In this document: positions 2,068-63,859 of the stretch, one piece after another
Layout of the letters: every line of letters starts with the position of its first letter
Position numbering within the stretch: position 1 is the stretch's first letter
DNA from: Asterias rubens
Lineage: Eukaryota
Length of the DNA stretch: 64,000 bases
Assembly: GCF_902459465.1 (NCBI RefSeq)
Contig: NC_047064.1
Coordinates: 22,134,001 to 22,198,000 of the forward strand
Direction: 5' to 3'
Position numbers and translations under genes: made by a program
The notes under the pieces: generated by a model
The model's database searches: none
The model's input: the letters and a program-made list of their open reading frames with translations, nothing else
Told to the model about the DNA's origin: nothing

Positions 2068-22036
<19,969 letters not shown>

Positions 22037-30934: not shown

Positions 30935-33900
30935 ATGGGGACATTCATTTCAAAGTTATGGGTGAGTATTTTCTGTTGATATTGAATATTTTCCGCTTCC
31001 ACATTCCATGATGACAATTAATTTCCTTCCTTTGCTTTTTTGAAATCAGATTCAGTAATTAGTATTTTCCACCCTTCGCACTAATTGCGTTTTAAACATT
31101 GGTGTTAATTTTCGTATTTCTAGACCTCCTCAACTTACATTTTTATGTGATTTCAAATACGGAAGTAAATCTGGTTTTTAAAGGAACTTAAATTTCCTTC
31201 CTCCCCATCCACATGTTTTACTCCAAGTCCGACCTATTCCATCTTGTGAGCATGATGGGGGGGGGGGGGGGGGGGAGTAGGAGGGGGAGGTGATGTGTGT
31301 AAACTTGTTGTGATAAGTAGTTAAACTCCAACAGTAATTTCGAGTGTCATTTATTTAGTTTAATTCAAAATCTATTGTATTTGGTAGACCCAGCTAGGGG
31401 CCGTGTACCACTCTTTGAAAATTGTGACATCTGCAGTCGATCGTCTGTTGATGAGATGTCAAAATAAACAAAATAATAAAAAAAAAATTATTTGCACACA
31501 TTTATTTCATTGCTGCCCTACATTTAAACTTACACATTTTACAAAGTTTTATAAATATATTCAAATTATGAGTAGTTTACAGTATTACTTAGTATCTTAG
31601 TATATGAAAGTTTACAATGATTTAGATAGTTATATATTAGGAAGCAAAGGCCAGGGATCGCAGCGTCAAAGAATAGCTCCTATAGTCAGAACAGTCCTGG
31701 AACTATATGAGATGAGGTTCATTCCTCTATCATCTATTGTGCGAAACAAACCTCTTACTCACTTTTTTATTCTGAGATGATTCTTTTTTTCCTAACCAGC
31801 GGAAGCAATCCACCATGGAGCAATTAGAGTCCATCGAGAAACGGATGGATACTCTCCTCGGCCTAAAGCGACGTGACACGCAGCGAGAGAAGCAGTATAT
31901 GGGGTCCTTGCTCCTTTACTCAGTCATCCTGTACCTCATGATGGCGCTGTTCTTCTATTTCTACTACGAAGCTAAAGATTGGAAAGGTCGCGCTACCCAG
32001 ATTCTACCGTTTCTTCTCTTTCCAGTATTGTAAGTAATTGGAGTCTTATTATAGATCATCATTCGGCAAAGACTTGTGTCCGTGTCTGCCTCATCCTCAA
32101 ATTGTAATGGGGGCGCATTCCTGGAGTCGCCCCCATCACCTGGTCTCTTTCAATTGAGCCTGCTCCTCTCAGCTCTCCTACGCTTTTACCACTCCACTTT
32201 GCCACATTGTCTATCCAGCACAGCTTAGGGCGACCTCTGCTTCGAATTGTACTCTTAGGCAGACCGTCTATAACTGCGCCGGGTTTACAAGGTGCTGCAG
32301 CGCACTTGGAACCACTGCCAGAATCACAGTAGCGAACCCAATTTCTTTTATATGTGCATTACACCACACATTTTACCTACAGCTTTACTTCCCATCGATA
32401 GGACAAAGGAGGACTGGTTAACTGTCTTGCCTAAAAATACACAGGTGTCGCGACTTGGACTTGAACCCACCCTTTGCTGATCAGAAATACCAGAGCTTGA
32501 GTTTGGTTCACTTGACAGCTCAAACACGTCATGCCACAAGTGACAAAGTTAAAGTTTAAAAGTCAATTCTGGGATCAGAAAGTCAATTATTAAGGGAAGT
32601 TGTGGCTGAAACACCAGATCAGTCATGATATGTATCCTATTGTAGTCCTGAGTTTTTATTTTAACGCCTAGATTGAAGCCGCCACAAGCAGAATAGCGGT
32701 CTTCGGAAGGCATGATGTGACTCTAACCTTAAACAAAAATGTTGAATCAATGAATTTTGTTGTCCTCTCTTCTCAGGATCTATCTAATAAGGAAGATACT
32801 TCAGTGGTATTTTGTGAAGAGAATTGCCAGGAATCGTAAGTGATGTTTATTCATATGGAAGGGGGGTTGTTGAATGTGGGGGGTAGATCTACAAGGCCAC
32901 TCAAAGGTTTTACTGGACCAGAATTTTTTCAAATTTATAAGGCAAAATCAAAATAAGAAACAAATAGGTCACGGATTTAGCCGTCGCAAAATGTTTAGAT
33001 GAAAAAAAGACATGTGTAATAAATTCAAAATGACCATCTAGTAAAGTACGATAGGATACAAAAAGTTTCTTCTGTTTGTACAGCTGTAATGAACCATTGA
33101 GTTGTGTATCATAGACTTGGATTTATTTGAAGTTTACATTTTATTCTTTTCTTTTTCTCAAGAAATGGCACTGGAAGACTTGAGAGCAGAGAAGAAGAAA
33201 ATTGTAAGTGAAACTGAGGAATTTGATTGAATTTCAAGGTTGACAAATGTATCCTATTCATTCATTCATTCAGTCGATGCGGAGCATCGGATGATGGCCC
33301 TCCAAATAATTAGATAATTACCATGATTGAATAGTATTATTTTCCCTTAAGTATATATTACTATAGTTAACTGCTTTTGTTATATATTATTTTTGATACA
33401 GCTTTTACCACTTTTTTTACTTTTCTCTGCATATCCACCATATAAAGAACCACTGTCTTTGTGTTTGTTTGTCCTGTTAGTGTTTGTCCATGTCTTTCCA
33501 TGTGTAACTTTTTGTGTGCTTTAAATATCCCAGGCATTGTTCTGAAAAAAAACTACGTTTGTATTTACTCACATCCCTGGGGGACTCCACCCTACAAGCT
33601 TGCTTTTGGGAGTCCTCCACCACTTAATCTATTGTGTATCTTTACTACTCTATGTTATATCTTGTCATCTGAAATGATTGAGTGGAAATAAAACTGAACT
33701 GAACTGAACTGAAATGTGTTGGTCCTCCATTGCTGTATGCAGCTCTTCCCGACGCAGTCCAGAGTCCCGGCGCAAGGTGTCCACATAGGTGGTTTGTGGT
33801 CTGCCTCGTAAACAGTGACCTTTAAGTAGGGGCCTGTTCACTGTGACTCCATTGAAGGCTTTACTAGGATCCTTCCTTACCCAACAAAATCCACCATCCT

Positions 33901-36900
33901 ATGGTAACTAAACACCCAAACTATTTGCCGCTGTCCATGGCATCCCTGATCCCATGAGTGATTTACTTGGATCTTTCCTTACTCATCTAACAAAATCCAC
34001 CATCATGTTAACTAAACACCCAAACTATTTGCCGCTGTCCATGGCATCCTTGATCCCATGAGTGATTTACTTGGATCTTTCCTTACTCATCTAACAAAAT
34101 CCACCATCATGGTAACTAAACACCCAAACTATTTGCCGCTGTCCATGGCATCCCTGATCCCATGAGTGATTTACTTGGATCTTTCCTTACTCATCTAACA
34201 AAATCCACCATCATGGTAACTAAACACCCAAACTATTTGCCGCTGTCCATGGCATCCTTGATCCCATGAGTAATTTACTTGGATCTTTCCTTACTCATCT
34301 AACAAAATCCACCATCCTATGGTAACCAAACACCCAAATATTTTGGTCTTGGACTCTGATCACTCCTGGTGGTACATGGTGGTATAGGCCTACCTGATTT
34401 GATGAGTGATTGACTAGGATACTTCCTGAATCTAACAAAATCCAGCACATCCAAGACGTTGGCCTCTGATTACGGTGGTCTACCTGATCCTGTGTAAAGT
34501 ATAATTGGTGCAGTCCTCAGTTCAACGGAATCGAGTAAAACGTAGAGGTGGATTCTGATAGGTTGGAGTAATTGGGGGAGGGTCCTGAATCATTGTGGAC
34601 TGAATACTTCACTACAACCTCCATATGAGAGAGGAGTTCTAAGTCATCACACTTTACCGTAAATCTTTTCAATGATCTGGGCCCAATTTCATAGAGCTGC
34701 TAACCACAAAAATTTGCTAAGCATGAAATTTCTTCCATGATAAAACAGGATTACCAACAAATTTTCCACGTGATTTTCAGGATAAGCAAACAACAGGTGA
34801 ATACCAGTAACACGCAATATGCAACAAATAGAAATTTGGTTGGAAATCCTGATTTTATCAAGGAAGAAATTTCATGCTAAGCAACTTTTTGTGCTTAGCA
34901 GCTCTATGAAATTGGGCCCTGTTGTCCTAAAATACTGGAAGCTAATTTTATATAATTTTTATTTATTTATTGTCCCTGATAGCTTGAAGAGGTTAAAGAC
35001 AAGGAGAGTTACAAGAAAGCAAAGGAGATTTTAGATCGATTCGACCCGGCCTCATCTCCCCCTCCTCTCCAACAAGCGACTCCGTCCACATCCAAAGCCA
35101 TCGCCCAACCAGGTTGGTTCAGTTATATCAATCGTATAGATGATCTTCCCATCAAGTGAACTTGGCAAACTCCCACAAGGGGATATAAACATTAAACTGG
35201 CAACAGCCAATCTCTCTCATACAAACATTGGTCTAACGTCTATGATTATGAATTGCACAAATCCATAAGTTGTGATTCAGTAACTAGATGACAATACTTA
35301 TTCTAGTCATTGTGAAATCAGTGGTTAGCTTGTAGTTAGAGCCTACAACCTTGTGATTGCAAGTCCTGCAGAAGACTAATCAGTGAACCACTGAGACATT
35401 AAGAAACAATTTCATCAGTCAAATTCATAAAGTGTATAAATTAATGAAGTTTTAAAGAATTTTCAGTTATAGCAAGATTTTTTTCTTGATCTGAAACTTG
35501 ATTTATTTTCTTTGTCCCTAGTTCCTAAGCTTCGGCAGAGACCAATGACAGCAAGGGGTGTAAGAACCCCAAACACACCAATGCAGAGACCGCCAGTCAG
35601 AGGCCCCCCTAGTATGGCACCTAGACTCACTCCACAGCAGCAACTTATGATGAGTGAGTATCCAACAGCCTGTTTCCACCAAAGACCAAAATGTCATATG
35701 CTCTTTTCAAAATCATGGCTTGTGTTGGGGCTGGCTTGGGCTGTGGCTTGGGTTGTGGCTTGGGTTCAATCTTGGTAGCATCCATACAATGGTCAGAGCC
35801 TAAGCCAGAGTCAAAGCCGAAGCTGAAGCCATGGTATTCCAAAAGGACCCACATATGACACATATTGTAATTTGTTATTAATTTTCATCTGTTTGGAATT
35901 CCAATCTTATTTAAGATCAAAACCTTCGTTTCGACCTGAAAGAAATTTGAGAATTGAGCATGCACGGTTGAAAATTGCCTTTTGAGTACCCATTATTGCA
36001 TCTTAATAAAGTGGTTGTGTCTTTCTTCATGTTCTTTTGTAGGACCCCAGACCACAGCTCGCCCCATCCTGCCCAGAGAGAGAGGCACAGTGGATAAACT
36101 TGTTGATTTCTTAGTCGGTGACGGACCATCCAGTCGCTATGCACTGATTTGTAAACACTGTTATTCACACAACGGCATGGCACTGCAGGAAGAGTTTGAG
36201 TATCTAGGTAAGAAGTGAACCCTTACTTGGTCTTAGCTAGATGGGATTGTGTGGATGGAGGACCACCACCAGCTATGATCATGGTCCAATTTTGTAGAGC
36301 TACTTTGGTGTGTTGTGTCCGAGCGGTCAAGTATACTGGACTCAAGCTCTGGTGTTTTTGATCAGGGTTCAAGTCCGGGTCATGACACTTGTGTACATGT
36401 ACTTAAGTAAGACACTTAATCATGATGCTTTGTCCTTTGGATGGAACATGAAGCCGTTGGTCCTGTGTGTTGTGTAATAACCCATAATAACATAATAAGT
36501 AAAATAACCCAGTTAGACTTATTGCTAAAAAGAAGGAGTTTCTGGCAGCACCTTGTTTGCCCGAGGCCAGTAAACTCAGGCCTGGACAAGTCTTGTGTTT
36601 TTCAATGACTAAAAGTACCACACTGTGTAATTTAAACAAGAAAATTATGTTCAATGTTGGCTTGTTGAGTCTGGTAAATATCTTCCAATTATGTTTGGTA
36701 TTAAAAGCAAACTTAATTCTTAGAACAAAAACTAATGAGATATTCTCTTAGTGTTTGTTCAAATAAAAATAGTACATTTTAAACTGTGTAGAAAATCTCT
36801 CATTACAGTGTGGTCTTGTATTATGCAGGTCCAGTATATATTGTTAACTACAAGCCCTGTCATCTGGTTGATTTTTCCTTTTTATTCTTTGAATCAAGCC

Positions 36901-37804
36901 ATGTAGTGTCTCAACGATCAGTCACCATTCTAGGTGCCATTCTGAGAATCTAGTAGACCCCCAGAGCATATCATGTGTTTTAATAATGTGTAAGAAGATT
37001 TCACCGTTGAACACTGTTTTTTATTGTTCTGTTTCTTGATTGTTTCAGCCTTCAAGTGTGCTTACTGTGGAGTATTAAACCCGTCCAAGAAAGTTCGTCC
37101 AAATGCTCCTCCACTCCCAGTTGCAACACCGCCTCCCCAGAGGCAAGGCTCTCCTCAAAGGGGTAAATATTCACAGTTTTTTCCTGTAAATCAATAAGAT
37201 TCTGAAATTCTCAGCCCCAACATCTGCTTTTCTGTGCGTTGGACCTTCCATCGTCTTCTCAGGTCTGTAAGGCATATGCTTTGGCACATTTTTGAGCTCC
37301 TGGTAAACGTAGTTTATTGATGAAGAAACATTAATTTACTACTGTAAAACATTTTTTTATTTTAAAATTACCACAAAGTTTTCATTCAATGACCTTTTGA
37401 TCACAATGAATATGAAACTAAAATTAATTACTTTTTCCCCCTCCACTTCACCCCCTCCCCTCATTGTCTTCTCTATTCACTTCTCACATACCCATTAATT
37501 GCCTCATTAACAATACACAGTCTCCGAGAACCAGCTACAAGCAAGAGGCAGCAATGCCAGTGATGGCGGCAGCCAATCAGATTCCGATCTGGGCTCGTCA
37601 AATCCCAGCACGCCGACCCCTGCCCCTCTCATGAACCCAGAGGCAGAAGGATCAACCCAGGATGAAGGAGAAGCGGATCATCCTGAGGACCAAGACGACA
37701 CCCCAGGGGAGGATGACACACAAAGTGACGCACCATCTGACGGACAGAGTGGGGCACCCAGTGATACACATGGTGTGGAAGAATCCTCATTAAGTACAAG
37801 CTGA
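30935..37804 (+). CDS. LNPK: Lunapark, ER three-way junction formation factor, 9 coding exons
   Basis: Exons 30935-30961, 31800-32029, 32777-32835, 33163-33203, 34983-35112, 35522-35653, 36043-36207, 37049-37162, 37521-37804 (TGA). N-myristoylation start MGTFISKLW; two TM segments; LEEVKDKESYKKAKEILDRFDP; ARPILPRERGTVDKLVDFLVGDGP; zinc finger RYALICKHCYSHNGMALQEEFEYLAFKCAYCGVLNP. An extra small exon in 35654-36042 cannot be excluded. Confidence 0.93.
32330..32540 (-). mobile_element. tRNA-derived SINE, minus-strand copy
   Basis: Minus strand reads actcaagctctggt..tctgatcag..gggttcaagtc..gacac(c)tgtgt..ttgtcct, shared with 36308-36480 (+) and about 63860-64000 (-). Confidence 0.6.
33862..34338. 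repeat. 104-bp tandem repeat, about 4.5 copies, in LNPK intron 4
   Basis: ggatct recurs at 33969, 34073, 34177, 34281 (period 104); first unit at 33867. Confidence 0.92.
34680..34918. mobile_element. Harbinger-like MITE (family H)
   Basis: ggcccaatttcatagagctgct .. agcagctctatgaaattgggcc, with CTG on both flanks. Confidence 0.8.
35145..35395 (-). mobile_element. SINE-like dispersed repeat (same family as 8493-8972)
   Basis: Shares ggcaaactcccacaaggggatataa..ctctctcatacaaacattgg..acaaccttgtgattg. Confidence 0.6.
36308..36480 (+). mobile_element. tRNA-derived SINE
   Basis: A-box-like tgtccgagcgg and B-box-like ggttcaagtcc; body shared with 32330-32540. Confidence 0.6.
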
Positions 37805-39269
37805 TAAAACAAACTTCATAACTTATTCTTTTCTTTCGGTTATTGCATGCATTTATTTGTTTTTTTCTTCAGATTTTGATAAGTTATTATGAATGATCGT
37901 CAATATTTGATTGGCAAACTGTGGAGATGTTTTTCTTGAGTGTCCTAAACTGGATTTATCTCAAATCTGCTCACAGACGCTTGCCTCGCCTTAGTGAAGA
38001 GTTCATTAACAACATAATTGATATTCTACTATGTCTATGCACTATTTCTAAAATAAAAAACAGTAATTCTGTCTGGCAATTTCAGTGAAAATGATTCAGA
38101 TTATATACAAAGCTCAATTGCTTGCCATGCCTGTGTGTCAGACTAAACCAAAACAAATAATTAAAAAAATCTTGCAAAACGCTTAATCCATGCAGTTTCT
38201 TGATGCTTGTAATGTTTTCTAGCTTGTCTTGTAATGCTTGTCTAGTTAGAACAATTACCAAAAATGCGCAAGATTACCGTTACATCTTGTTGAGATCGAT
38301 TTTAGGAAAGTTGATCTAAATTCATGTTTACCTTCTGAAACCCTACGGTGTAATTTAGATTGCTTTTCTTCTTTTTTGACGTTTTTTTTTTCTTCAGTTG
38401 TTTTCAACTTGTGCAAAGCCATGGTGTTACATTTGAACATAATCTAAAACAAACCTGCCAAATTTCAATCATAAAAATGGTTTGACATTAAAATCTTGTT
38501 TATATATAACTCGGCTATTGGTGGCCATTATTAGAGGCCATGTGTCTTTATTGTTTAAGATACTTGAAGACATAATGATGCCAGATGTATCCATTCATTA
38601 ATTTATCGATTGATGTGAATAATTTTTCTCACATTTTTTGTAAATAGTACAAGAATTATTTGATCATCATAACAAAATATTCACGGGTTATGTTGTTGTA
38701 AAAATGTGATTGTCATGTTTTGCTGTTTGAAACTGAGTAATTATTGTATCTGTAACTTGCCAAACGAATGGAATATATTGATGTCAAATGTGGTTTGATC
38801 TGTGAACCTTCTTGGAGGAACCACAAAAACATGTTTAAAAAAACGTTGCTTTTAAAAAAGCAAGGACAAGTTTATAAAAGCGTCCTGAAAGTATTCTTAG
38901 CATTTAAAAAAGCAAGGAACGTTATTAGTGTTGGGGCATAAAATGCAGTTTCTCACAGCCCAATAGTTTCTTAAACTCCTGTTGCGCACAATTTGATTGC
39001 AGTTTTTGAATTATAACTTAAATTTGGAATTACAATTGCAGTGTTAAATAAACAAACAAATCTCTTGAAAGTGAGCTTTGGTGCTTCTTTTTTGTTTTGG
39101 ACTCCATAACATACACTCTGAAGCTAATTTGATTAATAAATTGTGGGTGCTTTTGTAAAAGTCTCACATGCTTGAAAATTAAAAACAAGTGACATGTCTG
39201 TGAAAATTGTTTGAACTAGTGGTTATTTTTGCTTTAAGATTGTTTGTTATCAAATTTGTGTCAAAAATT

Positions 39270-42080
39270 GAAAAAATCACAAGGGGTAAGTCCAGCTTTT
39301 TCATCAAATTTTGGCTGAAAAAAAAAGAATAAAATCACAAGGGAAAAGTCCAGCATTTTCATCAAATTTTTGCCTTAAAAGGTTAAAATCACAAGAGGTA
39401 AGTCCAGCATTTTCATCAAATTTTTGCCTTAAAAGGTTAAAATCACAAGAGGTAAGTCCAGCATTTTCATCAAATTTTGGCGTAGAAAGGATAAAATCAC
39501 AAGGGGTAAGTCCAGCATTTTTACCAAATATTTGCTTAAAAATGATTCACAAGGGGTAAGTCCAGCATTTTCAACAAATGTTGGTCTAGAAAGGATAAAA
39601 TCACAAGGGGTAAGTCCAGCATTTTCAACAAATGTTGGTCTAGAAAGGATAAAATCACAAGGGGTAAGTCCAGCATTTTCAACAAATGTTGGTCTAGAAA
39701 GGATAAAATCACAAGGGGGTAAGTCCAGCATTTTCATCAAATTTTTGCCTTAAAAGGTTAAAATCACAAGAGGTAAGTCCAGCATTTTCATCAAACTTTT
39801 GCCTTAAAAGGTTACAATCACAAGAGGTAAGTCCAGCATTTTCAACAAATGTTGGTCTAGAAAGGATAAAATCACAAGGGGGTAAGTCCAGCATTTTCAA
39901 CAAATGTTGGTCTAGAAAGGATAAAATCACAAGGGGTAAGTCCAGCATTTTCAACAAATGTTGGTCTAGAAAGGATAAAATCACAAGGGGTAAGTCCAGC
40001 ATTTTCAACAAATATTTGCTTAAAAATGATTCACAAGGGGTAAGTCCAGCATTTTCAACAAATGTTGGTCTAGAAAGGATAAAATCACAAGGGGTAAGTC
40101 CAGCATTTTCAACAAATGTTGGTCTAGAAAGGATAAAATCACAAGGGGTAAGTCCAGCATTTTCAACAAATGTTGGTCTAGAAAGGATAAAATCACAAGG
40201 GGGTAAGTCCAGCATTTTCATCAAATTTTTGCCTTAAAAGGTTAAAATCACAAGAGGTAAGTCCAGCATTTTCATCAAACTTTTGCCTTAAAAGGTTACA
40301 ATCACAAGAGGTAAGTCCAGTATTTCAACAAATGTTGGTCTAGAAAGGATAAAATCACAAGGGGGTAAGTCCAGCATTTTCAACAAATGTTGGTCTAGAA
40401 AGGATAAAATCACAAGGGGTAAGTCCAGCATTTTCAACAAATGTTGGTCTAGAAAGGATAAAATCACAAGGGGTAAGTCCAGCATTTTCAACAAATGTTG
40501 GTCTAGAAAGGATAAAATCACAAGGGGTAAGTCCAGCATTTTCAACAAATGTTGGTCTAGAATGGATAAAATCACAAGGGGTAAGTCCAGCATTTTCAAC
40601 AAATGTTGGTCTAGAAAGGATAAAATCACAAGGGGGTAAGTCCAGCATTTTCAACAAATGTTGGTCTAGAAAGGATAAAATCACAAGGGGTAAGTCCAGC
40701 ATTTTCAACAAATGTTGGTCTAGAAAGGATAAAATCACAAGGGGTAAGTCCAGCATTTTCAACAAATGTTGGTCTAGAAAGGATAAAATCACAAGGGGGT
40801 AAGTCCAGCATTTTCAACAAATGTTGGTCTAGAAAGGACAGAATCACAAGGGGGTAAGTCCAGCATTTTCAACAAATGTTGGTCTAGAAAGGATAAAATC
40901 ACAAGGGGGTAAGTCCAGCATTTTCAACAAATGTTGGTCTAGAAAGGATAAAATCACAAGGGGGTAAGTCCAGCATTTTCAACAAATGTTGGTCTAGAAA
41001 GGATAAAATCACAAGGGGTAAGTCCAGCATTTTTACCAAATATTTGCTTAAAAATGATTCACAAGGGGGTAAGTCCAGCATTTTCAACAAATGTTGGTCT
41101 AGAAAGGATAAAATCACAAGGGGTAAGTCCAGCATTTTCAACAAATGTTGGTATAGAAAGGATAAAATCACAAGGGGTAAGTCCAGCATTTTCAACAAAT
41201 GTTGGTCTAGAAAGGATAAAATCACAAGGGGTAAGTCCAGCATTTTCAACAAATGTTGGTCTAGAAAGGATAAAATCACAAGGGGTAAGTCCAGCATTTT
41301 CAACAAATGTTGGTCTAGAATGGATAAAATCACAAGGGGTAAGTCCAGAATTTTCAACAAATGTTGGTCTAGAAAGGATAAAATCACAAGGGGGTAAGTC
41401 CAGCATTTTCAACAAATGTTGGTCTAGAAAGGATAAAATCACAAGGGGTAAGTCCAGCATTTTCAACAAATGTTGGTCTAGAAAGGATAAAATCACAAGG
41501 GGTAAGTCCAGCATTTTCAACAAATGTTGGTCTAGAAAGGATAAAATCACAAGGGGGTAAGTCCAGCATTTTCAACAAATGTTGGTCTAGAAAGGACAAA
41601 ATCACAAGGGGTAAGTCCAGCATTTTCGACAAATGTTGGTCTAGAAAGGATAAAATCACAAGGGGGTAAGTCCAGCATTTTCAACAAATGTTGGTCTAGA
41701 AAGGATAAAATCACAAGGGGGTAAGTCCAGCATTTTCAACAAATGTTGGTCTAGAAAGGATAAAATCACAAGGGGTAAGTCCAGCATTTTCAACAAATGT
41801 TGGTCTAGAAAGGATAAAATCACAAGGGGGTAAGTCCAGCATTTTCAACAAATGTTGGTCTAGAAAGGACAAAATCACAAGGGGTAAGTCCAGCATTTTC
41901 AACAAATGTTGGTCTAGAAAGGATAAAATCACAAGGGGGTAAGTCCAGCATTTTCAACAAATGTTGGTCTAGAAAGGATAAAATCACAAGGGGGTAAGTC
42001 CATGCAGCACAATTTTCATATTAATTTTGAGGCCACAATGAACAATGTCACAAGGGGTAAGTCCAGCATTTTCATCAATT
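39270..42080. repeat. 54/55-bp minisatellite, about 50 copies, with higher-order structure, between LNPK and HIBADH
   Basis: Unit aaatcacaagggg(g)taagtccagcattttcaacaaatgttggtctagaaaggata (period 54 at 39601/39655); variant units recur; degenerate flanking units. Confidence 0.96.
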
Positions 42081-43936
42081 TTTGGTATAAAAATCACAAG
42101 GGTCCTACTTCCTTGCATTATTTTGACTTTATACCAGTAGCATTTTAACTTACAAGTTTAAGTTTAACTGCTACAAAATAACACGCATGAATGACTGCCA
42201 TTGTAGCTCTTGATGGTCATGACGATATTATTTACAATACCAATGGTTGTCATGACAACATTGACCACATCATTGGATGCTGGTAATCTGTCAATAAAAA
42301 AGGATTTCATTACCATGACAATATAATTGAATCTTTTGCTCATTTCCGGTTTAATCAAATGAACTTGTAAAATACACAAAGCATGAGACAAAAATAATTC
42401 CCATCATCCAGACCCACTCTTCATGGCTCTGCTTACTAAAAAATTATGTGCCTACAGTCAACCAATATCTGCTTCCAAGATTTGCATCAAATTTCAGCAA
42501 TAGCTTCTAAAATTGAGAATGCATTGCAGATCTGCCAACTCTCAATGATCCTGCAGGAATTTCCCTGAAAATAAACAAATCTTTCTATGTTCTGATGAAC
42601 AAATTCTTAAATCTCTCTGGTTAGGAGAATTTATGTCCTATCTGGTTGATTTACGAATTCTCCCTCATTGCAAGATACATATTTTGGCATCTTTGGGATT
42701 GCAACGCAAGCTAAAAACCAACAGTTCTCTTGTGTGAATTGGTCTGCCATTGTATGTGCTAATCTTCTTGTTTACAGAGCCATGAAACTGGGCAATTATA
42801 TTTTCAACTAAATTTACGAACACTTAAGATTGTTCAATACCATAATTATAAAATCAATAAAGTCAATCAAGGCAACTTGTAATTGTCAAACTGTCTGACT
42901 TAAAATTGATGAAAACACTTCATTATTATTATTTTGCATAAAAATATGGAGAGATTTTGCATATGTATCTACAAGATTTCATACGGTTACAGCTGAAAAT
43001 AAAAAAAATTCGACTTGAATAAAAAGTACAAATTCAACCTACGAGGCTTGCCAAGAAGCGGGTATCATAGGGGTGGGAATTTACACCAATAAATGAAAAG
43101 ATGTTAAGTTTGGCCTGAACCGTACCTTGAATGCATTAACATAGCATTAAAAAATACATAATAGAGGTAGCCAAGTCCTAAATAAAATAATTCCCACAAG
43201 TTTGAAAGTGGAATTGAACCCCAACCTTCATCCTGCATGAAAAATAAACAAACAAAAAACAGTCTATACTACCTTTAAAATACCAAAGATTAGTTGTTAA
43301 AGATTAAAAGTAATTTTGTTAAACCCTGTTTTATTTTCACCCATTTTGCCATGTAAGTGTAACAAAATAGTAACTCAGTTTTGGAGAAAGATCAGGGCCT
43401 AATATTCCTAGCTACTCTAACCTAGTTTTGGTTTTCAATACCCCCTCCAATAATCTATTACTAAAACCATTAATTGACCCTGACCAAAAGCAAAGGCACC
43501 AACAAAACTGCAACTATCATCAGTTCAGGTACGTTTTCTACAAAACATTCACGTTTATATTGTGTAGCACTTCAAATTTGGCACACCTCAACTGACACAT
43601 GACTTTGACAATTGTCTTGGAGGTGGAGGTGAATGATATTAGAATACCATTCCTTGAAAGTTTGGGACCATCATATCACGGCTTTCAATACCTGAGAGAG
43701 GAAGGTATAGTTCGTCATCGACCCACACAAAAGAGCCACAAAGCCTGGACTTGTAGGAAACATAAAATCTAACATTTTATTGAGATTGCAGCGTGCATTT
43801 TTTTCATCCAAACCTGATTTTAACAAAATGGCACATCTTGTTCAGCTGCTGTTTACAAAAATTGAGTTTAGGTTGACATTACTATACATGATGTAAAATT
43901 TACCATAAACTTGTTAGTATCTTGCCTGCCTGGAAA

Positions 43937-44049
43937 TGCCAAGGAATGCCCAAGGAATGCCCAAGGAATGCCCAAGGAATGCCCAAAGAATGCCCAAGGA
44001 ATGCCCAAGGAATGCCCAAGGAATGCCCAAGGAATGCCCAAGGAATGCC
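43937..44049. repeat. 11-bp tandem repeat, about 10 copies
   Basis: (gcccaaggaat)n. Confidence 0.93.
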
Positions 44050-44802
44050 CACGGTCTCTCTTGGTTTTAAACAGGGTGGTATGACCAGTGCACAGTGTTG
44101 AGGTGAAGTGTTAAAGACAAACAGGTTTGATGAAGCCTGACTCATGTTTTTCACGAATTACAAATATCCTTGCCCTGCAATGAAAAACCTTGGCAAAACT
44201 TGCTTTGTATTTACTTTTATGTGAAGTATAAACAAAACGAACAATGCTTCCTTTGAAGTTAAAAGTCGGGTCATAGATTGGTTTGTGTCAACCCAAAGCT
44301 GAATTATAGACAGAATTATTAACACAGATACAATAAAAGTCACCTGTGAAAGTTTCAGTTGAATACAGTGTCTACTTGCTGAGAATGAGCAATCAGCAAA
44401 AATAATTGCAACGGTATTTACACCAAGAGCGTTGAATCTTCCACAACTAGCAAGGTTGACAGTGAGTACGAACCACATCTCTGGCTGCTGCATTCATGAA
44501 CGTACATCACAGAAATGTCTACGATCAGTCAACCTTTAGAATTCTGAGAAACAAACCGCATGGTTCATTTCTCAGAACCATGCATCTCAGATTCATATGT
44601 TTTGGGAGGAAAAATATCCAAACCATAAATAATATATCGAAAGAAAAATCTTTCTCAAAATAGTTGATACTATCAACACACCTGCAGTGCTTCTTACAAG
44701 TAAGTTTTTATCAAATTAATTTTTGGATTATTTACCAATCTACGACCCAACCTTTCCAAGCTGCCATCTCGTCGAGTTGAGATGATTTCTTGGAGCAAGC
44801 AA

Positions 44803-47800
44803 TCATTCTTCTTCTTTGAGGTATTGGTAAGCAGATGAGAAGTCTTTATGACTGTAGCCTTTATTACACATGACTCTGTAGATCTGATGAGCTAATGATC
44901 CTAGAGGTGTTGGTGTCTTTGTGTTGGTCGCAGCGTTCTGAGCTAAGCCGAGATCCTGCAAAGAAGATAAATGATTTTCAATCATTTTGTTGAATAGTTT
45001 TTCTTTCAATCTGAGGGAAGATGTTGTTATAATATATTATGTAATAGATCCAAGGCGCCTCCAAAGGGACTGGCACTGTGACCGGTAGGCATGAAGATAC
45101 CTGTTATAATATATTATGTAATAGATCCAAGGCGCCTCCAAAGGGACTGGCACTGTGACCGGTAGGCATGAAGATACCTGTTATAATATATTATGTAATA
45201 GATCCAAGGCGCCTCGAAAGGGACTGGCACTGTGACCGGTAGGCATGAAGATACCTGTTATAATATATTATGTAATAGATCCAAGGCGCCTCCAAAGGGA
45301 CTGGCACTGTGACCGGTAGGCATGAAGATACCTGTTATAATATATTATGTAATAGATCCAAGGCGCCTCCAAAGGGACTGGCACTGTGACCGATAGGCAT
45401 GAAGATACCTGTTATAATATATTATGTAATAGATCCAAGGCGCCTCCAAAGGGACTGGCACTGTGACCGGTAGGCATGAAGATACCTGTTATAATATATT
45501 ATGTAATAGATCCAAGGCGCCTCCAAAGGGCCTGGCACTGTGACCGATAGGCATGAAGATACCTGTTATAATATATTATGTAATAGATCCAAGGCGCCTC
45601 CAAAGGGACTGGCACTGTGACCGGTAGGCATGAAGATACCTGTTATAATATATTATGTAATAGATCCAAGGCGCCTCCAAAGGGACTGGCACTGTGACCG
45701 CTAGGCATGAAGATACCTGTTATAATATATTATGTAATAGATCCAAGGTGCCTCCAAAGGGACTGGCACTGTGACCGGTAGGCATGAAGATACCTGTTAT
45801 AATATATTATGTAATAGATCCAAGGTGCCTCCAAAGGGACTGGCACTGTGACCGGTAGGCATGAAGATACCTGTTATAATATATTATGTAATAGATCCAA
45901 GGTGCCTCCAAAGGGACTGGCACTGTGACCGGTAGGCATGAAGATACCTGTTATAATATATTATGTAATAGATCCAAGGTGCCTCCAAAGGGACTGGCAC
46001 TGTGACCGGTAGGCATGAAGATACCTGTTATAATATATCATGTAATAGATCCAAGGCGCCTCCAAAGGGACTGGCACTGTGACCGGTAGGCATGAAGATA
46101 CCTGTTATAATATATTATGTAATAGATCCAAGGCGCCTCCAAAGGGACTGGCACTGTGACCGGTAGGCATGAAGATACCTGCTTAAAGAAATCAAACCAA
46201 GGGAGACTTTTATCAAATTGCTTACATAATTGGTTGGTGCACTTGGCTGCGGATCAAGAAGAAAAAACAAATTTCCCTGTAAAGATGGTGTAAATCAATA
46301 TTCAACAATTATGTAAGAGCGCCTCTTGTAACCAGCTACATCGACCCATATGTGACCACTGCCCGAGATCAAAGGCGCCTAATTTTCCTAAGAGGGGAAA
46401 ACCGGGAGCTCAGAAAAAAACCTAATTGCATAGGAGAACAATGACACATATGGCCAAACCAGGGCCAGGGTGGTGAGAGGCAAGTGCTTCACGCACAGGC
46501 CACAATTGTTAGCTTCTTTTTATAGAAAATTTGCCTTAAAATGAAGCTACCTTTGTCATGAGAGCTGTACTGAATCCACCCTTGTAGTTATTGCTGGAGG
46601 GGACCCCATCAAGCACCCCTGGTACTGGGTTATAGGTGTCACTAGACCAACTACGCCCACTACTGGTGTTTAAAATCTGGGCTAACATCATTGGGTCAAG
46701 ACCTAACCTGTAAATGGATGGAGAGAATGGCACAAATAATCTTCAAAATCACTTTTAATGATCAGTCATTATGTACTAATTTTGGTTCAAATGCTTCTAA
46801 TTGAGAACCAAGTTTTTTACGGCCATTAACCGAGCACATCATTCTCAGAAAAATTGCAACTTCAACAGAATATTTTGAGGCCTCGGAATGGAGAAGGTCA
46901 ATGTCAAATCCAAAATAAATAATTGTAAAAACTGAAAGAACCCACATACCTGATGCCCAAATTCATCGTCTCTGACGTTCCTATCATAGCTATACCCAAC
47001 ATCATATTGTTGCATATCTTGGCCGCCTGGAAATATAAAAATAATCAAAAATGAAATAAGATGTACTAGTTCTCTCTTGATTTCCATGTACTTTTATGAT
47101 CTTGGCCTTGTCCCCTATATGTAGCCCATCATGAATACAGATACCAATGTTATAACCATGAAGGTCAGTATATCGTCCCTCGCAGCATTCACATCTAAGA
47201 CAAGACAGTCCACTATAAAGCCAACCTACCTGACCGGTACCCACTGGTCCAGTGTTGACTACATTCTTCCCCATGCATTGTAGGAGTTCCTTGGCTGCTT
47301 CAAACTCTTCAGGCTTCCCTCCAACCATGAAGGTCAGTATAGCGTCCCTCGCAGCATTCACACCTAAGACAAGACAGTCCACTATAAAGCCAACCTACCT
47401 GACCGGTACCCACTGGTCCAGTGTTGACTACATTCTTCCCCATGCATTGTAGGAGTTCCTTGGCTGCTTCAAACTCTTCAGGCTTCCCTCCAACCATGAA
47501 GGTCAGTACAGCGTCCCGCGCAGCATTCACATCTAAGACAAGACAGTCCACTATAAAGCCAACCTACCTGACCGGTACCCACTGGTCCAGTGTTGACTAC
47601 ATTCTTCCCCATGCATTGTAGGAGTTCCTTGGCTGCTTCAAACTCTTCAGGCTTCCCTCCAACCATGAAGGTCAGTACAGCGTCCCGCGCAGCATTCACA
47701 TCTAAGACAAGACAGTCCACTATAAAGCCAACCTACCTGACCGGTACCCACTGGTCCAGTGTTGACTACATTCTTCCCCATGCATTGTAGGAGTTCCTTG

Positions 47801-50800
47801 GCTGCTTCAAACTCTTCAGGCTTACCTCCAACCATGAAGGTCAGTATAGCGTCCCTCGCAGCATTCACATCTAAGACAAGACAGTCCACTATCAAGCCAA
47901 CCTACCTGACCGGTACCCACTGGTCCAGTGTTGACTACATTCTTCCCCATGCATTGTAGGAGTTCCTTGGCTGCTTCAAACTCTTCAGGCTTCCCTCCAA
48001 CCATGAAGGTCAGTACAGCGTCCCGCGCAGCATTCACACCTAAGACAAGACAGTCCACTATAAAGCCAACCTACCTGACCGGTACCCACTGGTCCAGTGT
48101 TGACTACATTCTTCCCCATGCATTGTAGGAGTTCCTTGGCTGCTTCAAACTCTTCAGGCTTCCCTCCAACCATGAAGGTCAGTACAGCGTCCCGCGCAGC
48201 ATTCACACCTAAGACAAGACAGTCCATATTTATTTGTTTATTTCATTAACTATTCCTGTAGGTGCATTTTGTCATTCAACATTGCCCTCCACTGAAGGGA
48301 GGGCCACAGACCAGGCCCCATTTTCATAGAGCTGTTAAGAAAATACTCAAGCAAAAGTTGAGTGGGGCACCAGTTGAAACAATGAACACTTTATGAAATT
48401 TTGGCTGGTAACCAGTTTTTTTAAAGCAATTTTTGTCTGTGCTTAGCAAGTTTGTATGCTTATAGACTCTATGACACTGAGCCTAGCTGTTTAAGCATAT
48501 TTTCTGTGCTTACTATAGCAGAAAAGCAATCACTAGCAAATGTGTATTTTAACAATCCAGAAAATTTGACAGCCTAAATTTCTTGCTAACCTTTGAAAAG
48601 CAAGTTTCTCTAATATAGGTAGCACAAACATGTTTTGTGTGCTTAGGGTTAGCAGTGCTATGACTTGGAAACGCAGTAAGCACACAATCGGCTGTTAAGC
48701 AGCTCTATGAAATTAGGCCCAGAGAGTGAGGCCTTGTCCAAACTGGTGGTTTCTGCTACAGCTTAAACTGTTGCTCAAGTGTTGCTAAGGACATCCTAAA
48801 CTTCAAAGCATGATGAAGTGGTGGTCCAGCCGCAGCAGTAGCTACAAGTTCGTGCCTAGCCGAGTTGCTATCGAGATTTCAGCATTCATTACTTACCACC
48901 AGATACTGGAGCGTCTAAGTACACAGCGCCTTTCTTGTCTGCTTGAGCAGCGACATCTTTTGCAACTGAAGGATCAATGGTGCTGCTATCAATGATTAAA
49001 GTGCCTTTTTTCACAGTTCTGAAAAAGCGTAAAAATTTTTTTTTAAAGGTGTGCTTAACATTTGTTAAGTTGAAAGAGTTCACAGATTTACACCAAACTA
49101 AAAAAATAGTTTAAAGATGATCAAGGTGGAAAGCTTGCCTTAAAATATTTTTGCTTGAAATACTTTAGTTCTTGCAAAATGAGTAAAACAATTAGGCTTG
49201 ATCTTTCAAGTCTAAAATTCAGTTTTTTATTTAGTGATGGTTTTGTCACCCCATAAAACATCTTATTTATTGGAAGAGTAATTCATTTCAATTCGCTAGT
49301 TTCAAAACACACACCTCTAATAACACCATTAAAAATGTGCTACCATTATAGGTTGTCTGATTTTGATCAATATGAAAAATCTAGTGTATGGTTTAGGAAG
49401 TGATTTTTTTGCACATTTATCTTTTGCATGCTTCTTTTGATTGCATGGCAAATAAAATACGCAATGGTAGTTTGAGGATTTCCAATACTCACGATAGTAT
49501 GCCATTCCTGCTGTTATACGCCTCAAGAACGTTGGGACTAGACGGTAACATGGTCACGATACGATCAACTTTCTCAGCAACCTCTGCTGCCGTGTCAGCG
49601 ATCTGTGCACCCTTGCCTTGCAGCTCGCTGACAGCCTCTGGGTAAACGTCATGAACAATGAGCGGGTAGCCTTGTTTTATAAGGTTCTTGGCCATGTGGG
49701 CGCCCATGTTACCCAGGCCGATGAACCCAACAGGCGTCATGGAGGCCTGGAGAGGAAGAATTAAACAATCAATGATTAATAAATCAGAATTTACGAGGGT
49801 GGTCAGGTTGGCATACTGGTATCTTTCTTTGCCTTCAACCTCTAAGAATCATATCGGGGCACTGTGTGAGTTGGGTTTTCAGTCCCTACCTGACTGCATG
49901 GGTTTTCCCTCAAGGTTTTCCTCCCGCATCTAAAACTGAAACTTCTTCATTGTCTTCTCTGCATTGGGTTCTTGGTTAGTACAGTGATTAAGTTCATGTT
50001 TCTGAGGGTTCTTGGCTTCACAACAAAATTTAATAAACCATATGAAATTAATTATACCGAATTATGCTCAAAGTGCCAACCGAGACAAAGTACTCAGGAG
50101 GGGGGGGGGGACACCTAGGATTGTTACTCTCACCTACTGTACTAGAGGTCAAAAGGAGGTTGTATTTTTATTTATTTATAAAATAATCCGTATGAATCTC
50201 ACCTTCTGCTGTGAAGACCCTGGTGGGAAGAGAGTAAAATATATCAGAAATTTGGAAATGACTAATGACAAACACCAATAATTGATGCAAACTAGACCCA
50301 GTAACTGGGGCGCTGTACTCCTTTTTTCGAAATTTTGACCGAGAATGTAAAAATTTCGAAAAAAGGAGTACAGCGCCCCAGTTACTGGGTCTAGATGCAA
50401 ACTACATATTTTGTGTCTCTAGTCTAACATAATAAGAGTCTTAAATTCAAAACAATATCATTTGAACATAAATAAACCGATCGTCAGCCGTAAATGAAAA
50501 TAGGTTCTAAAGAATTTTCATGATACGGCTGACGATCGGCTTATTATGGTCAATTAATATACGTTTGAATGTGTGTGTGTGTACTGTAAACATTGCTCAG
50601 GTACCTTTACTTTTAACCAAGGGCTGGGCCCAATTTCTTAAATTAGCTTGCAATGTGTACACTGTACTGTGTAGGTAACTTTAATCACAAAAACTAGATA
50701 AGTACAGCAGAAAAGTATGGCCTTAAAATAAAATAACAGAATAAGGTTACCACCACAAGACTTATGACTTAACATTGCTGTGACTGGTGCAGTTTTTTTC

Positions 50801-51185
50801 TGCCCAACAGCTTTATGAAACTGGGCCCTGGTTTAGTTTTAGTGTTTAACCAAACATCTCCATGAACCAACCATAGCGCAAGTCTGTCCTTGCTATTATT
50901 TTACTAATAATAGACAAGGGCCCCTACGTACGTATGACTAATGTACATGATCGCAGGAATAGTAAAGCGAATATAATACGGTGAACGTATTATTAAACAG
51001 AATGAATCCCGGTTTTTTTTACAGGAAATCGAAATGATTTATGCCAAAATAAATTATGTCAAGCAACAATGTGATGCTCATTTACCTGAAAAGCCTCTAT
51101 GATTTTCATATCTCAGTTTCGTTTGGCCGAAAACAGTTACATTTTGCAGCACCCTTTGCGACGCGATCCTACACAGGGAAGCCAT
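44803..51185 (-). CDS. HIBADH: 3-hydroxyisobutyrate dehydrogenase, mitochondrial; 8-exon model in which exon 5 exists in six tandem copies
   Basis: Exons 51086-51185 ([14 protein letters not shown].., targeting-peptide-like), 50203-50219 (17-nt microexon), 49493-49746 ([12 protein letters not shown] Rossmann motif), 48897-49018 ([16 protein letters not shown]), one of 48075-48208 / 47906-48039 / 47737-47870 / 47568-47701 / 47399-47532 / 47230-47363, then 46950-47026 (AAKICNNMM), 46551-46707 ([16 protein letters not shown]), 44803-44955 (DLGLAQ..YLKEEE-stop). Confidence 0.94.
45026..46181. repeat. 77-bp minisatellite, 15 copies, in the last HIBADH intron
   Basis: Unit gttataatatattatgtaatagatccaaggcgcctccaaagggactggcactgtgaccggtaggcatgaagatacct; starts at 45026, 45103, 45180; 1156 / 77 = 15. 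Confidence 0.97.
47154..48226 (-). repeat. 169-bp tandem array = 134-nt HIBADH coding exon + 35-nt GT..AG spacer; 6 full copies and 1 partial
   Basis: Minus-strand unit: ..tcttag|(g/a)tgtgaatgctgcg..ggtaccggtcag|gtaggttggc..; period 169. Confidence 0.95.
48315..48719. mobile_element. Degenerate Harbinger-like MITE(s), family H
   Basis: ggccccattttcatagagctgttaag at the left end and ttaagcagctctatgaaattaggccc at the right; possibly two adjacent copies. Confidence 0.55.
50203..50219 (-). CDS. HIBADH: 17-nt microexon of HIBADH (encodes G-S-S-Q-Q-K junction)
   Basis: Minus strand tattttactctcttcccaccag|ggtcttcacagcagaag|gtgagat. It bridges the phase-1 end of exon 1 to the phase-0 start of the next exon. 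Confidence 0.75.
50293..50393. mobile_element. 101-bp hairpin MITE with 44-bp perfect TIRs and a 9-bp TSD (Mutator-like signature)
   Basis: TIR tagacccagtaactggggcgctgtactccttttttcgaaatttt (50293-50336) and its reverse complement (50350-50393); GATGCAAAC at 50284-50292 and 50394-50402. Confidence 0.85.
50461..50555. repeat. Imperfect inverted repeat (small foldback remnant)
   Basis: ataaaccgatcgtcagccgta .. tacggctgacgatcggcttat. Confidence 0.7.
50627..50827. mobile_element. Diverged Harbinger-like MITE (family H)
   Basis: ggcccaatttc .. gaaactgggcc, with CTG on both flanks. Confidence 0.65.
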
Positions 51186-63621: not shown

Positions 63622-63859
63622 CTAGACAAAATAAAAGAACACGGTCAAAGAACCTTGTATTATTTTATATTTTTGTTTATATATTTCTGGCAATAAATCA
63701 TAGATGTCTCATAAGTGAACTTTTTTTTTACTCACTGTAGCTCGCAAGCCTGAGGAAACTTGTTAACAAGGGTGCCTGCTATAATGAACCAGAAAGACTG
63801 GGGCTTTTCCCTACTCATCCACAGTACGTGCACAATAAATACTCATACATGCGACCTAC

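What the first reader, a model, noticed from the sequence alone, without database searches (positions are those of the whole stretch)
30935..51185. LNPK and HIBADH adjacent and convergent: a candidate pre-duplication state of the vertebrate Evx/Hox flank
Seen: LNPK (+) and HIBADH (-) are tail-to-tail neighbours with no gene recognised between them. Established (from memory): in mammals LNPK is the first gene beyond EVX2 at HOXD and is transcribed away from the cluster, while HIBADH is the first gene beyond EVX1 at HOXA and is transcribed toward it. Merging the two paralogons gives Evx, LNPK, HIBADH with the last two convergent, which is the arrangement here. Inference: this pair is an ancient microsynteny reciprocally lost after vertebrate genome duplications. 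In this genome MESD-SIN3 occupies the side where Evx would be, so the Hox/Evx link was either broken here or acquired later in chordates.
Basis: partly seen in the sequence, partly recalled or inferred. Interest (0 to 1): 0.75.

Follow-up and report, generated by a model that had tools for sequence, protein, structure and literature searches.

The report
Ancient LNPK-HIBADH tail-to-tail gene pair
In this starfish (Asterias rubens) the lunapark and HIBADH genes lie tail to tail, and the same arrangement in a feather star and a brachiopod shows the pairing dates from early bilaterian animals. That makes it a plausible ancestor of the gene flanks beside the vertebrate HoxA and HoxD clusters.

Summary
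LNPK (+, ATG 30935 to stop 37804, 9 exons) and HIBADH (-, ATG 51185 to stop 44803) are real, complete and convergent. The 7.0 kb between their stop codons holds only repeats.

LNPK maps at 100% identity to the Asterias rubens protein, so the window is from that starfish.

The same LNPK-then-reversed-HIBADH adjacency is present in the crinoid Anneissia japonica and the brachiopod Lingula anatina. Published gene order in the sea star Pisaster is consistent with it. The pair is therefore inherited from the bilaterian ancestor, not a mis-join or chance.

The pair is not seen next to LNPK in Ptychodera, Saccoglossus, two amphioxus species, the Pacific oyster or the purple sea urchin.

No homeobox lies within 10 kb of LNPK in any locus inspected. 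Published tables put LNPK on the Hox-bearing chromosome in sea star, sea urchin and amphioxus. In amphioxus it lies 0.7 Mb from the Hox anchor gene MTX2 and is transcribed away from it.

The reading [quoted passage not shown] is the most parsimonious one, but it remains an inference. I found no paper describing it.

This is a new example of a known kind of phenomenon and is of moderate interest.

The parts
30935..37804 (+). LNPK (lunapark, an ER junction protein), complete. The nine coding exons are at about 30935-30961, 31800-32030, 32778-32834, 33165-33203, 34983-35111, 35521-35652, 36045-36206, 37048-37161 and 37520-37804 (stop).
   Evidence: Exact mapping of A. rubens protein P0169. Pfam PF10058 on the zinc-finger exon. 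Splice sites read.
37805..44802 (.). Interval between the two stop codons (3' UTRs plus intergenic DNA). No gene was recognised.
   Evidence: Only repeat-borne ORFs. No Rfam family and no tRNA. No conserved non-coding match to the crinoid or brachiopod intergenic regions. The Pisaster annotation has a single gene model between LNPK and TRPM2.
39273..42002 (.). 54-bp minisatellite of about 50 copies inside the intergenic interval.
   Evidence: Tandem Repeats Finder, 93% matches.
44803..51185 (-). HIBADH (mitochondrial 3-hydroxyisobutyrate dehydrogenase), complete. Exon 1 runs from 51185 to about 51088 and exon 2 from about 49748 to 49493. Exon 3 is at about 49020-48892, and exon 4 is the repeated cassette at 47154-48226. 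Exon 5 is at about 47029-46946 and exon 6 at about 46700-46539. Exon 7 runs from about 44950 to 44803 (stop).
   Evidence: ORF translations. Pfam NAD_binding_2 and NAD_binding_11. Human HIBADH is the best solved-structure match, E 2e-29. Exon 1 and exon 5 read.
47154..48226 (-). 169-bp tandem array holding about six copies of HIBADH exon 4. Each unit is a 134-nt exon plus a 35-nt spacer that has GT and AG ends.
   Evidence: Lingula has one copy of this exon.
45025..46181 (.). 77-bp minisatellite (15 copies) in the last HIBADH intron.
30065..30256 (-). MESD first coding exon, head to head with LNPK. The two start codons are 679 bp apart.
   Evidence: ORF. Pfam Mesd, E 1.5e-5. Same adjacency in Pisaster, g2610 and g2611.
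2900..21515 (+). SIN3 (context gene upstream of MESD).
   Evidence: PAH repeats and the Sin3a_C domain.
57473..64000 (-). 3' part of a TRPM2-like channel gene (NUDT9-homology exons). Context gene upstream of HIBADH on the same strand.
   Evidence: ORFs with the REFGEEA Nudix box. Weak Pfam NUDIX hit. Pisaster g2613 is named TRPM2-like.

Best explanation
LNPK and HIBADH form a convergent (tail-to-tail) neighbour pair that already existed in the last common ancestor of protostomes and deuterostomes. It has simply been inherited in slowly rearranging lineages: asteroid and crinoid echinoderms, and the brachiopod Lingula. It was broken up in others: sea urchin, enteropneusts, amphioxus and oyster.

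The two genes are unrelated housekeeping genes, one for ER shaping and one for valine catabolism. I see no shared promoter and no conserved non-coding DNA, so retention is most likely neutral inertia rather than functional coupling.

In the vertebrate stem the pair probably lay just beyond Evx on the posterior side of the single Hox cluster, in the order Evx, LNPK pointing away, HIBADH pointing back. After the two genome duplications LNPK survived only at HoxD and HIBADH only at HoxA, which produced today's paralogous 'first gene beyond Evx' positions.

Shown here: the gene models, and the adjacency with its orientation in three distant lineages. Inferred: inheritance, neutrality, the position beside Evx before duplication, and the reciprocal loss.
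For: - Gene models and orientation in the window.
- Anneissia japonica: LNPK (+) 10001-15436, then a 341-aa NAD_binding_2/NAD_binding_11 gene (-) from 25212. Its last exon is 69% identical to the window's and is closest to human HIBADH.
- Lingula anatina: LNPK (+) 10001-15562, then a 335-aa HIBADH (-) at 20325-24881. The mapped exon segments are 55-73% identical, and human HIBADH is the best match at E 2e-20.
- Pisaster has the window's gene order with one gene model between LNPK and TRPM2.
- For two named genes, chance adjacency is about 2/N per lineage. That is about 1e-4 genome-wide and about 2e-3 even within one chromosome, so two or three independent origins in the same orientation are negligible.
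- Teleosts: hibadh lies beyond evx1 and lnp beside evx2, and both copies from the fish-specific duplication are still at their clusters (PMC2080641).
- LNPK lies on the Hox-bearing chromosome in sea urchin (SPU1), sea star (POC9) and amphioxus (BFL16, which is CM022901.1 at 19,152,309 bp).
- In B. floridae LNPK (9.99-10.007 Mb, minus strand) lies 705 kb from the Hox anchor gene MTX2 (10.712 Mb) and is transcribed away from it. The Hox cluster is 476 kb, and another gene sits at 11.02 Mb on the far side of MTX2. This fits the order MTX2, Hox, Evx..., LNPK.
- No conserved intergenic sequence and no RNA gene, which fits neutral retention.
Against: - The pair is absent next to LNPK in six of the lineages sampled:
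  - Ptychodera has a BTB/BACK gene 8 kb downstream.
  - Saccoglossus and oyster have nothing within 10 kb.
  - B. floridae has a retrotransposon.
  - B. belcheri has a Cys-rich gene and then an NFE2L-like gene.
  - S. purpuratus has MOCOS on one side of LNPK and lectin-like or uncharacterised genes on the other.
- Amphioxus, the best proxy for the pre-duplication chordate, therefore does not show the proposed state.
- I could not locate HIBADH itself in those genomes, so 'not adjacent' cannot be told apart from 'nearby but more than 10 kb away'.
- No homeobox lies within 10 kb of LNPK anywhere.
- In Pisaster the Hox cluster is at least about 1 Mb away.
- In Ptychodera LNPK is on PFL23, and the Hox cluster appears to be on another chromosome. 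The Hox-chromosome size given in the tables (29.0 Mb) differs from PFL23's 23.1 Mb.
- The mammalian gene orientations are from memory.
Confidence: 0.7

Rival explanations
1. The pair is ancient, but its position beside Evx/Hox is a chordate or vertebrate-stem acquisition. On this view the echinoderm arrangement says nothing about an ancestral bilaterian Hox flank. The pair simply travelled as a unit and landed next to Evx before the vertebrate duplications.
For: - No homeobox lies within 10 kb of LNPK in any invertebrate locus.
- In Pisaster ordinary genes fill about 1 Mb on the MTX2 side and about 0.9 Mb on the TRPM2 side of the pair, leaving no room for the 425-kb Hox cluster.
- In Ptychodera LNPK appears to be on a different chromosome from the Hox cluster.
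- The paper's authors report that the neighbours of Hox clusters are highly rearranged (PMC11175523).
Against: - LNPK is on the Hox chromosome in sea star, sea urchin and amphioxus.
- In amphioxus LNPK lies within 0.7 Mb of MTX2 and points away from it, as in vertebrates.
- The Ptychodera separation is explained by a hemichordate-specific chromosome split.
- Same-chromosome linkage is expected if all these genes were always in linkage group B2.
Confidence: 0.45
2. The pair is held together by selection. Possible causes are regulatory elements of one gene, or of a third gene, lying inside the other (a genomic regulatory block), or interplay between the convergent 3' ends.
For: - The arrangement has survived more than 500 million years in three lineages with the same orientation and a short gap: 4.8, 7.0 and 9.8 kb.
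- In mouse, Hibadh introns carry HoxA limb enhancers and Hibadh contacts them (PMC3873244). This shows that such bystander roles exist for this gene.
Against: - The pair is lost in most sampled lineages. Strong constraint would not allow that.
- There is no detectable conserved non-coding sequence between the starfish, crinoid and brachiopod intergenic regions. All hits had E of 0.007 or weaker over at most 38 bp.
- Both genes are housekeeping genes, and tail-to-tail genes share no promoter.
Confidence: 0.15
3. The matches are coincidence. Echinoderms and Lingula brought the two genes together independently, and the vertebrate 'first gene beyond Evx' positions are unrelated to this.
For: The distribution is patchy, with 3 of 9 lineages positive. 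Both genes belong to the same ancestral linkage group, which raises the chance of random adjacency.
Against: - Even within one chromosome of about 1,000 genes the chance per lineage is about 2e-3 before orientation is required.
- It would have to happen twice in invertebrates, and independently produce matching paralogous slots in vertebrates.
Confidence: 0.04
4. The adjacency in the window is an assembly mis-join inside the 54-bp array.
For: A 2.7-kb minisatellite lies between the genes. I laid no reads across it.
Against: The same gene order is found in the independent Pisaster assembly. The same pair is found in Anneissia and Lingula.
Confidence: 0.01

Closest known systems
Conserved ancestral microsyntenic pairs of unrelated genes (Irimia et al. 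2012, Genome Res, PMC3514665)
   Same: Two non-paralogous genes remain immediate neighbours in the same relative orientation in both protostome and deuterostome lineages.
   Different: That paper's main text mentions neither Lnp nor Hibadh, and its supplement is not held. Many of its pairs are explained by regulatory blocks with conserved non-coding elements, and none was detectable here. In vertebrates the two genes are on different chromosomes, so screens that require vertebrate adjacency would miss this pair.
The vertebrate Hox paralogon posterior flank (EVX1-HIBADH-TAX1BP1-JAZF1 at HOXA; EVX2-LNPK at HOXD)
   Same: The genes are the same. Merging the two vertebrate flanks gives LNPK and HIBADH side by side and convergent, as in the window. 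The teleost flanks were confirmed in PMC2080641.
   Different: No Evx or Hox gene lies near the pair in the starfish window or in any fetched invertebrate locus. MESD and SIN3 occupy the Evx side here. TAX1BP1 and JAZF were not seen, and TRPM2 follows HIBADH.
Bystander genes in Hox regulatory landscapes (Lnp in the HoxD digit landscape, from my own knowledge of Spitz et al. 2003; Hibadh in the HoxA limb landscape, Berlivet et al. 2013, PMC3873244)
   Same: The same two genes are the ones that host or border the 5' long-range Hox enhancers in mouse (for Hibadh).
   Different: Those roles are vertebrate features. Nothing in the starfish locus indicates developmental enhancers, and I did not test for them.

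Membership tests
Ancient (bilaterian) conserved microsyntenic pair | Two non-paralogous genes are immediate neighbours in the focal genome. | tested here: met
   LNPK 30935-37804 (+) and HIBADH 44803-51185 (-). Nothing was recognised between them.
Ancient (bilaterian) conserved microsyntenic pair | Orthologues are adjacent in at least one protostome and one deuterostome lineage. | tested here: met
   Lingula, Anneissia and Asterias (the window).
Ancient (bilaterian) conserved microsyntenic pair | The relative orientation is the same in all lineages that carry the pair. | tested here: met
   LNPK is on + and HIBADH on - (convergent) in L002, L008 and the window.
Ancient (bilaterian) conserved microsyntenic pair | The pair is widely retained across phyla. 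| tested here: not met
   Absent next to LNPK in Ptychodera, Saccoglossus, B. floridae, B. belcheri, M. gigas and S. purpuratus. Retention is patchy.
Genomic regulatory block (pair kept by cis-regulatory constraint) | Conserved non-coding elements lie within or between the genes. | tested here: inconclusive
   blastn of the intergenic regions against crinoid and brachiopod gave only chance-level hits. The distances are too great for a fair test, and no closer genome was available.
Ohnologous-region reciprocal loss after the vertebrate 2R duplications | The two genes occupy equivalent slots beside paralogous anchors (Evx1 and Evx2). | tested here: met
   Literature only. In teleosts hibadha lies 5' of evx1, and lnpa is the only other gene beside evx2 (PMC2080641). 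The mammalian positions are from memory.
Ohnologous-region reciprocal loss after the vertebrate 2R duplications | Gene orientations in vertebrates match the merged convergent pair. | not tested
   From memory, human LNPK is transcribed away from HOXD and HIBADH towards HOXA. No tool here gave vertebrate loci, and the look-ups were exhausted.
Ohnologous-region reciprocal loss after the vertebrate 2R duplications | The unduplicated chordate outgroup carries the merged arrangement. | tested here: not met
   Amphioxus LNPK is followed by other genes or a retrotransposon, and no HIBADH lies within 10 kb.
Ohnologous-region reciprocal loss after the vertebrate 2R duplications | The genes lie on the Hox-bearing linkage group in invertebrates. 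| tested here: met
   Shown for LNPK only: SPU1, POC9 and BFL16 in the supplement of PMC11175523, matched to my loci by coordinates and chromosome length. For HIBADH it follows only where HIBADH is LNPK's neighbour.

The most novel reading that the evidence does not exclude
The convergent LNPK-HIBADH pair is a bilaterian-age unit more than 550 million years old. It formed the first genes beyond Evx on the posterior side of the single ancestral chordate Hox cluster. If so, the 5' regulatory landscapes of HoxD (around LNPK) and HoxA (inside HIBADH) would be the two surviving halves of one ancestral bystander-gene scaffold. The starfish, crinoid and brachiopod loci would preserve that scaffold, apart from its link to Evx, in its undivided form.
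Probability: 0.4. Interest if true: 0.6.

Novelty: new member of a known kind. Interest (0 to 1): 0.45.

Why it matters
The flanks just beyond Evx are where the long-range digit and limb enhancers of HoxD and HoxA lie.

- If LNPK and HIBADH were one ancestral neighbour pair, that fixes the gene order and polarity of the pre-duplication posterior Hox flank.
- It also gives a concrete case of reciprocal loss between paralogous regions.
- It gives invertebrate loci (sea star, crinoid, Lingula) where the undivided arrangement can be studied.
- It shows that microsynteny screens which demand adjacency in vertebrates can miss ancient pairs that were split by genome duplication.

It does not change the current understanding of Hox regulation. 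The pair looks neutrally retained and is lost in many lineages.

Tried and rejected
- **Failed look-ups.** Four of the twelve contig look-ups found nothing on record. Two were isoforms: Ylistrum X2 and B. floridae X5. The other two were B. lanceolatum and Owenia. A scallop, an annelid and a third amphioxus were therefore not sampled.
- **HIBADH not mapped directly.** HIBADH is multi-exon, so I had no reference for a full-length protein, and I did not type one. I could not map HIBADH itself in amphioxus, hemichordates, sea urchin or oyster. "Not adjacent" there means "not within 8-10 kb downstream of LNPK".
- **Conserved non-coding elements.** Comparison with the crinoid and brachiopod intergenic regions gave nothing above chance.
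- **Other features.** The Rfam and tRNA scans of 30-52 kb were empty. A scan for the homeodomain WFQNRR motif in the window and all eight loci found nothing.
- **Literature.**
  - Ten full-text searches found no paper that links LNPK and HIBADH as an invertebrate pair.
  - The Irimia 2012 supplement and the Asymmetron supplement are not held.
  - Acemel et al. 2016, on the amphioxus Hox flanks, is not held.
- **Hox position in the stored supplement.**
  - I tried to place the Hox cluster on Pisaster POC9 and S. purpuratus SPU1 from the supplement of PMC11175523, but the Hox rows are in the part that was cut off.
  - I could only show that there is no room for the cluster near the pair.
  - A phrase search across tab-separated columns does not work.
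- **Reads not laid.** The interval is dominated by long tandem arrays, which that tool turns away, and cross-species evidence already excludes a mis-join.
- **N run.** The run of N at 11-188 was left untouched.
Full report
**What is in the window**

The window is from the starfish Asterias rubens. A search with the lunapark zinc-finger exon, followed by a full-length search, returned the A. rubens lunapark protein P0169. It maps at 100% identity onto nine + strand exons from ATG 30935 to the stop at 37804. The zinc-finger exon hits Pfam PF10058.

HIBADH lies on the minus strand. Its first exon starts at ATG 51185 and looks like a mitochondrial presequence. The exons that follow carry NAD_binding_2 and NAD_binding_11. 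Their best solved-structure match is human HIBADH, E 2e-29. The stop is at 44803.

The 6,998 bp between the stop codons contain a 54-bp minisatellite (39273-42002) and an 11-bp microsatellite. They contain no Rfam family and no tRNA. The only ORFs lie inside the repeats.

The wider gene order in the window is SIN3 (+), MESD (-), LNPK (+), HIBADH (-), TRPM2-like (-).

**Not an artefact**

A supplementary table of Lin et al. 2024 (PMC11175523) lists genes on chromosome 9 of the sea star labelled POC. Judging from the abbreviation, I take this to be Pisaster ochraceus, which I believe is an asteriid like Asterias.

| Gene model | Gene | Position on POC9 (Mb) |
|---|---|---|
| g2609 | Sin3a | 1.409-1.425 |
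| g2610 | MESD | 1.431-1.433 |
| g2611 | lunapark | 1.434-1.439 |
| g2613 | TRPM2-like | 1.455-1.499 |

Exactly one gene-model number, g2612, falls between lunapark and TRPM2. This is the window's order in an independent assembly. I could not see the name of g2612.

**Is the pair older than starfish?**

I fetched the LNPK neighbourhood, with 10 kb on each side, from other animals. HIBADH is present next to LNPK in two of them.

- **Crinoid Anneissia japonica.**
  - LNPK (+) is followed 9.8 kb later by the 3' end of a minus-strand 341-aa gene with NAD_binding_2 and NAD_binding_11.
  - The last exon of that gene is 69% identical to the window's and is closest to human HIBADH.
- **Brachiopod Lingula anatina.**
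  - LNPK (+) at 10001-15562 is followed 4.8 kb later by a complete minus-strand 335-aa HIBADH at 20325-24881.
  - The exon segments that mapped match at 55-73% identity, and the best solved-structure match is human HIBADH, E 2e-20.

Crinoids are, to my knowledge, sister to all other living echinoderms, and Lingula is a protostome. For two named genes the chance of adjacency is about 2/N per lineage. That is about 1e-4 genome-wide, and about 2e-3 even if both genes are confined to one chromosome of about 1,000 genes. The same convergent orientation is also required. Independent origin in these lineages is not credible. The pair was present in the protostome-deuterostome ancestor.

**Where the pair is not seen**

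| Lineage | What follows LNPK |
|---|---|
| Ptychodera flava | A BTB/BACK gene 8 kb downstream |
| Saccoglossus | Nothing called and no HIBADH by tblastn within 10 kb; there are assembly gaps |
| Branchiostoma floridae | A retrotransposon |
| Branchiostoma belcheri | A Cys-rich gene, then a convergent CNC-bZIP (NFE2L-like) gene |
| Pacific oyster (Magallana gigas) | Nothing within 10 kb |
| Strongylocentrotus purpuratus | The published gene list puts MOCOS on one side of LNPK and lectin-like or uncharacterised genes on the other |

Retention is therefore patchy. I could not locate HIBADH itself in these genomes, so I cannot say how far apart the two genes are there.

**Relation to Hox and Evx**

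No homeodomain motif occurs in the window or within 10 kb of LNPK in any fetched locus.

From the same supplement, LNPK lies on the Hox-bearing chromosome in three species:

- Sea urchin: SPU1.
- Sea star: POC9.
- Amphioxus: BFL16. Its length of 19,152,309 bp and the LNPK coordinates match my locus on CM022901.1.

In Ptychodera LNPK is on PFL23. The Hox chromosome size given in the tables is 29.0 Mb, whereas PFL23 is 23.1 Mb. The authors describe a hemichordate-specific split of the Hox-bearing ancestral chromosome.

On POC9 ordinary genes fill the interval from MTX2 (0.47 Mb) to the pair. They also fill the interval from TRPM2 to about 2.4 Mb. The 425-kb Hox cluster is therefore not within roughly 1 Mb of the pair.

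In B. floridae LNPK occupies 9.992-10.007 Mb on the minus strand. MTX2 lies at 10.712 Mb, and a recent paper uses MTX2 as a flanking anchor of the amphioxus Hox cluster (PMC13012124). The Hox cluster measures 476 kb. An unrelated gene sits at 11.02 Mb on the far side of MTX2.

The simplest layout is MTX2, then Hox1-15, then the Evx genes (reported to be adjacent to Hox15 in this species), then some further genes, then LNPK transcribed away from the cluster. That is the HoxD arrangement in vertebrates. This layout is an inference from coordinates, not a reading of the gene list.

**Vertebrate side**

A teleost BAC study reports hibadha immediately 5' of evx1 at HoxAa and hibadhb near HoxAb. It reports lnpa as the only other gene beside evx2 at HoxDa, and lnpb at HoxDb (PMC2080641).

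From my own knowledge of the human annotation, LNPK is transcribed away from HOXD and HIBADH towards HOXA. I did not test this here.

In mouse, Hibadh introns carry HoxA limb enhancers, and the Hibadh promoter contacts them (PMC3873244).

**Interpretation**

The most economical account has three steps. An ancient convergent LNPK-HIBADH pair lay beyond Evx in the vertebrate stem. It was duplicated along with the Hox clusters. LNPK was then kept only at HoxD and HIBADH only at HoxA.

The invertebrate orientation picks the order Evx, LNPK, HIBADH over the alternative head-to-head order.

The pair looks neutrally retained, for these reasons:

- Both genes are housekeeping genes.
- Tail-to-tail genes share no promoter.
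- No conserved non-coding sequence was detected against the crinoid or Lingula.
- The pair is lost in most lineages.

I could not decide whether the Evx link is as old as the pair or arose only in chordates. Same-chromosome linkage and the amphioxus position of LNPK favour at least a chordate age for the LNPK part.

**Novelty**

Ten full-text searches found no paper that treats the two genes as an invertebrate pair or as a split ancestral pair. Large microsynteny catalogues may contain it, but I could not check their supplements.

I rate this a new member of a known kind of phenomenon (an ancient microsyntenic pair with reciprocal loss after duplication), of moderate interest.

Noticed in passing
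window 47154-48226 (-): HIBADH exon 4 is present as about six tandem copies of a 169-bp unit. Each unit is a 134-nt exon plus a 35-nt GT...AG spacer. Because 134 is not a multiple of 3, only 1, 4 or 7 copies would keep the reading frame. Lingula has a single copy of this exon. This was also noted by the scan as s1-150133.
   Followed up: partly
window 30065-30961: MESD (-) and LNPK (+) are head to head, with start codons 679 bp apart, which suggests a shared bidirectional promoter. The same adjacency is seen in Pisaster (g2610 and g2611). In S. purpuratus and Ptychodera the two genes are megabases apart.
   Followed up: partly
window 1-30256; PMC11175523 supplement: The block methanethiol oxidase (SELENBP1), SIN3, MESD is kept in the same order in Pisaster (POC9, 1.39-1.43 Mb), S. 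purpuratus (SPU1, 15.79-15.85 Mb) and Ptychodera (PFL23, 16.14-16.23 Mb). This is an ambulacrarian microsyntenic block.
   Followed up: no
L006 20480-30479 (Branchiostoma belcheri): An NFE2L-like (CNC-bZIP) gene lies convergent about 10 kb downstream of amphioxus LNPK. As I recall, NFE2L2 and LNPK lie on opposite sides of HOXD in human. Between them in amphioxus is a two-repeat Cys-rich gene with no Pfam hit.
   Followed up: partly
PMC11175523 supplement, SPU1 27.92-27.95 Mb and 28.32-28.35 Mb: S. purpuratus carries the block ZNF830, MOCOS, LNPK twice, 400 kb apart. This is either a segmental duplication or an uncollapsed haplotype. SNX10, which I recall as a HoxA-side gene in vertebrates, lies about 58 kb from the second copy.
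   Followed up: no
L001 1-9518 and L004 1-9526: In both hemichordates a large WD40 beta-propeller gene lies head to head upstream of LNPK. This is a hemichordate-conserved neighbour that differs from the echinoderm and brachiopod neighbours.
   Followed up: no
window 12898-16824, 39273-42002, 45025-46181, 54642-56900, 62717-63306: There are five long minisatellites, with periods of 51, 54, 77, 55 and 46 bp and 13 to 77 copies. They lie in introns and intergenic DNA and cover about 16% of the window.
   Followed up: no
L008 1-9391 and L004 38263-40430: A BTB/BACK(-Kelch) gene lies next to LNPK in both Lingula (upstream) and Ptychodera (downstream). This could be chance within a large gene family, or a remnant of older synteny.
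   Followed up: no
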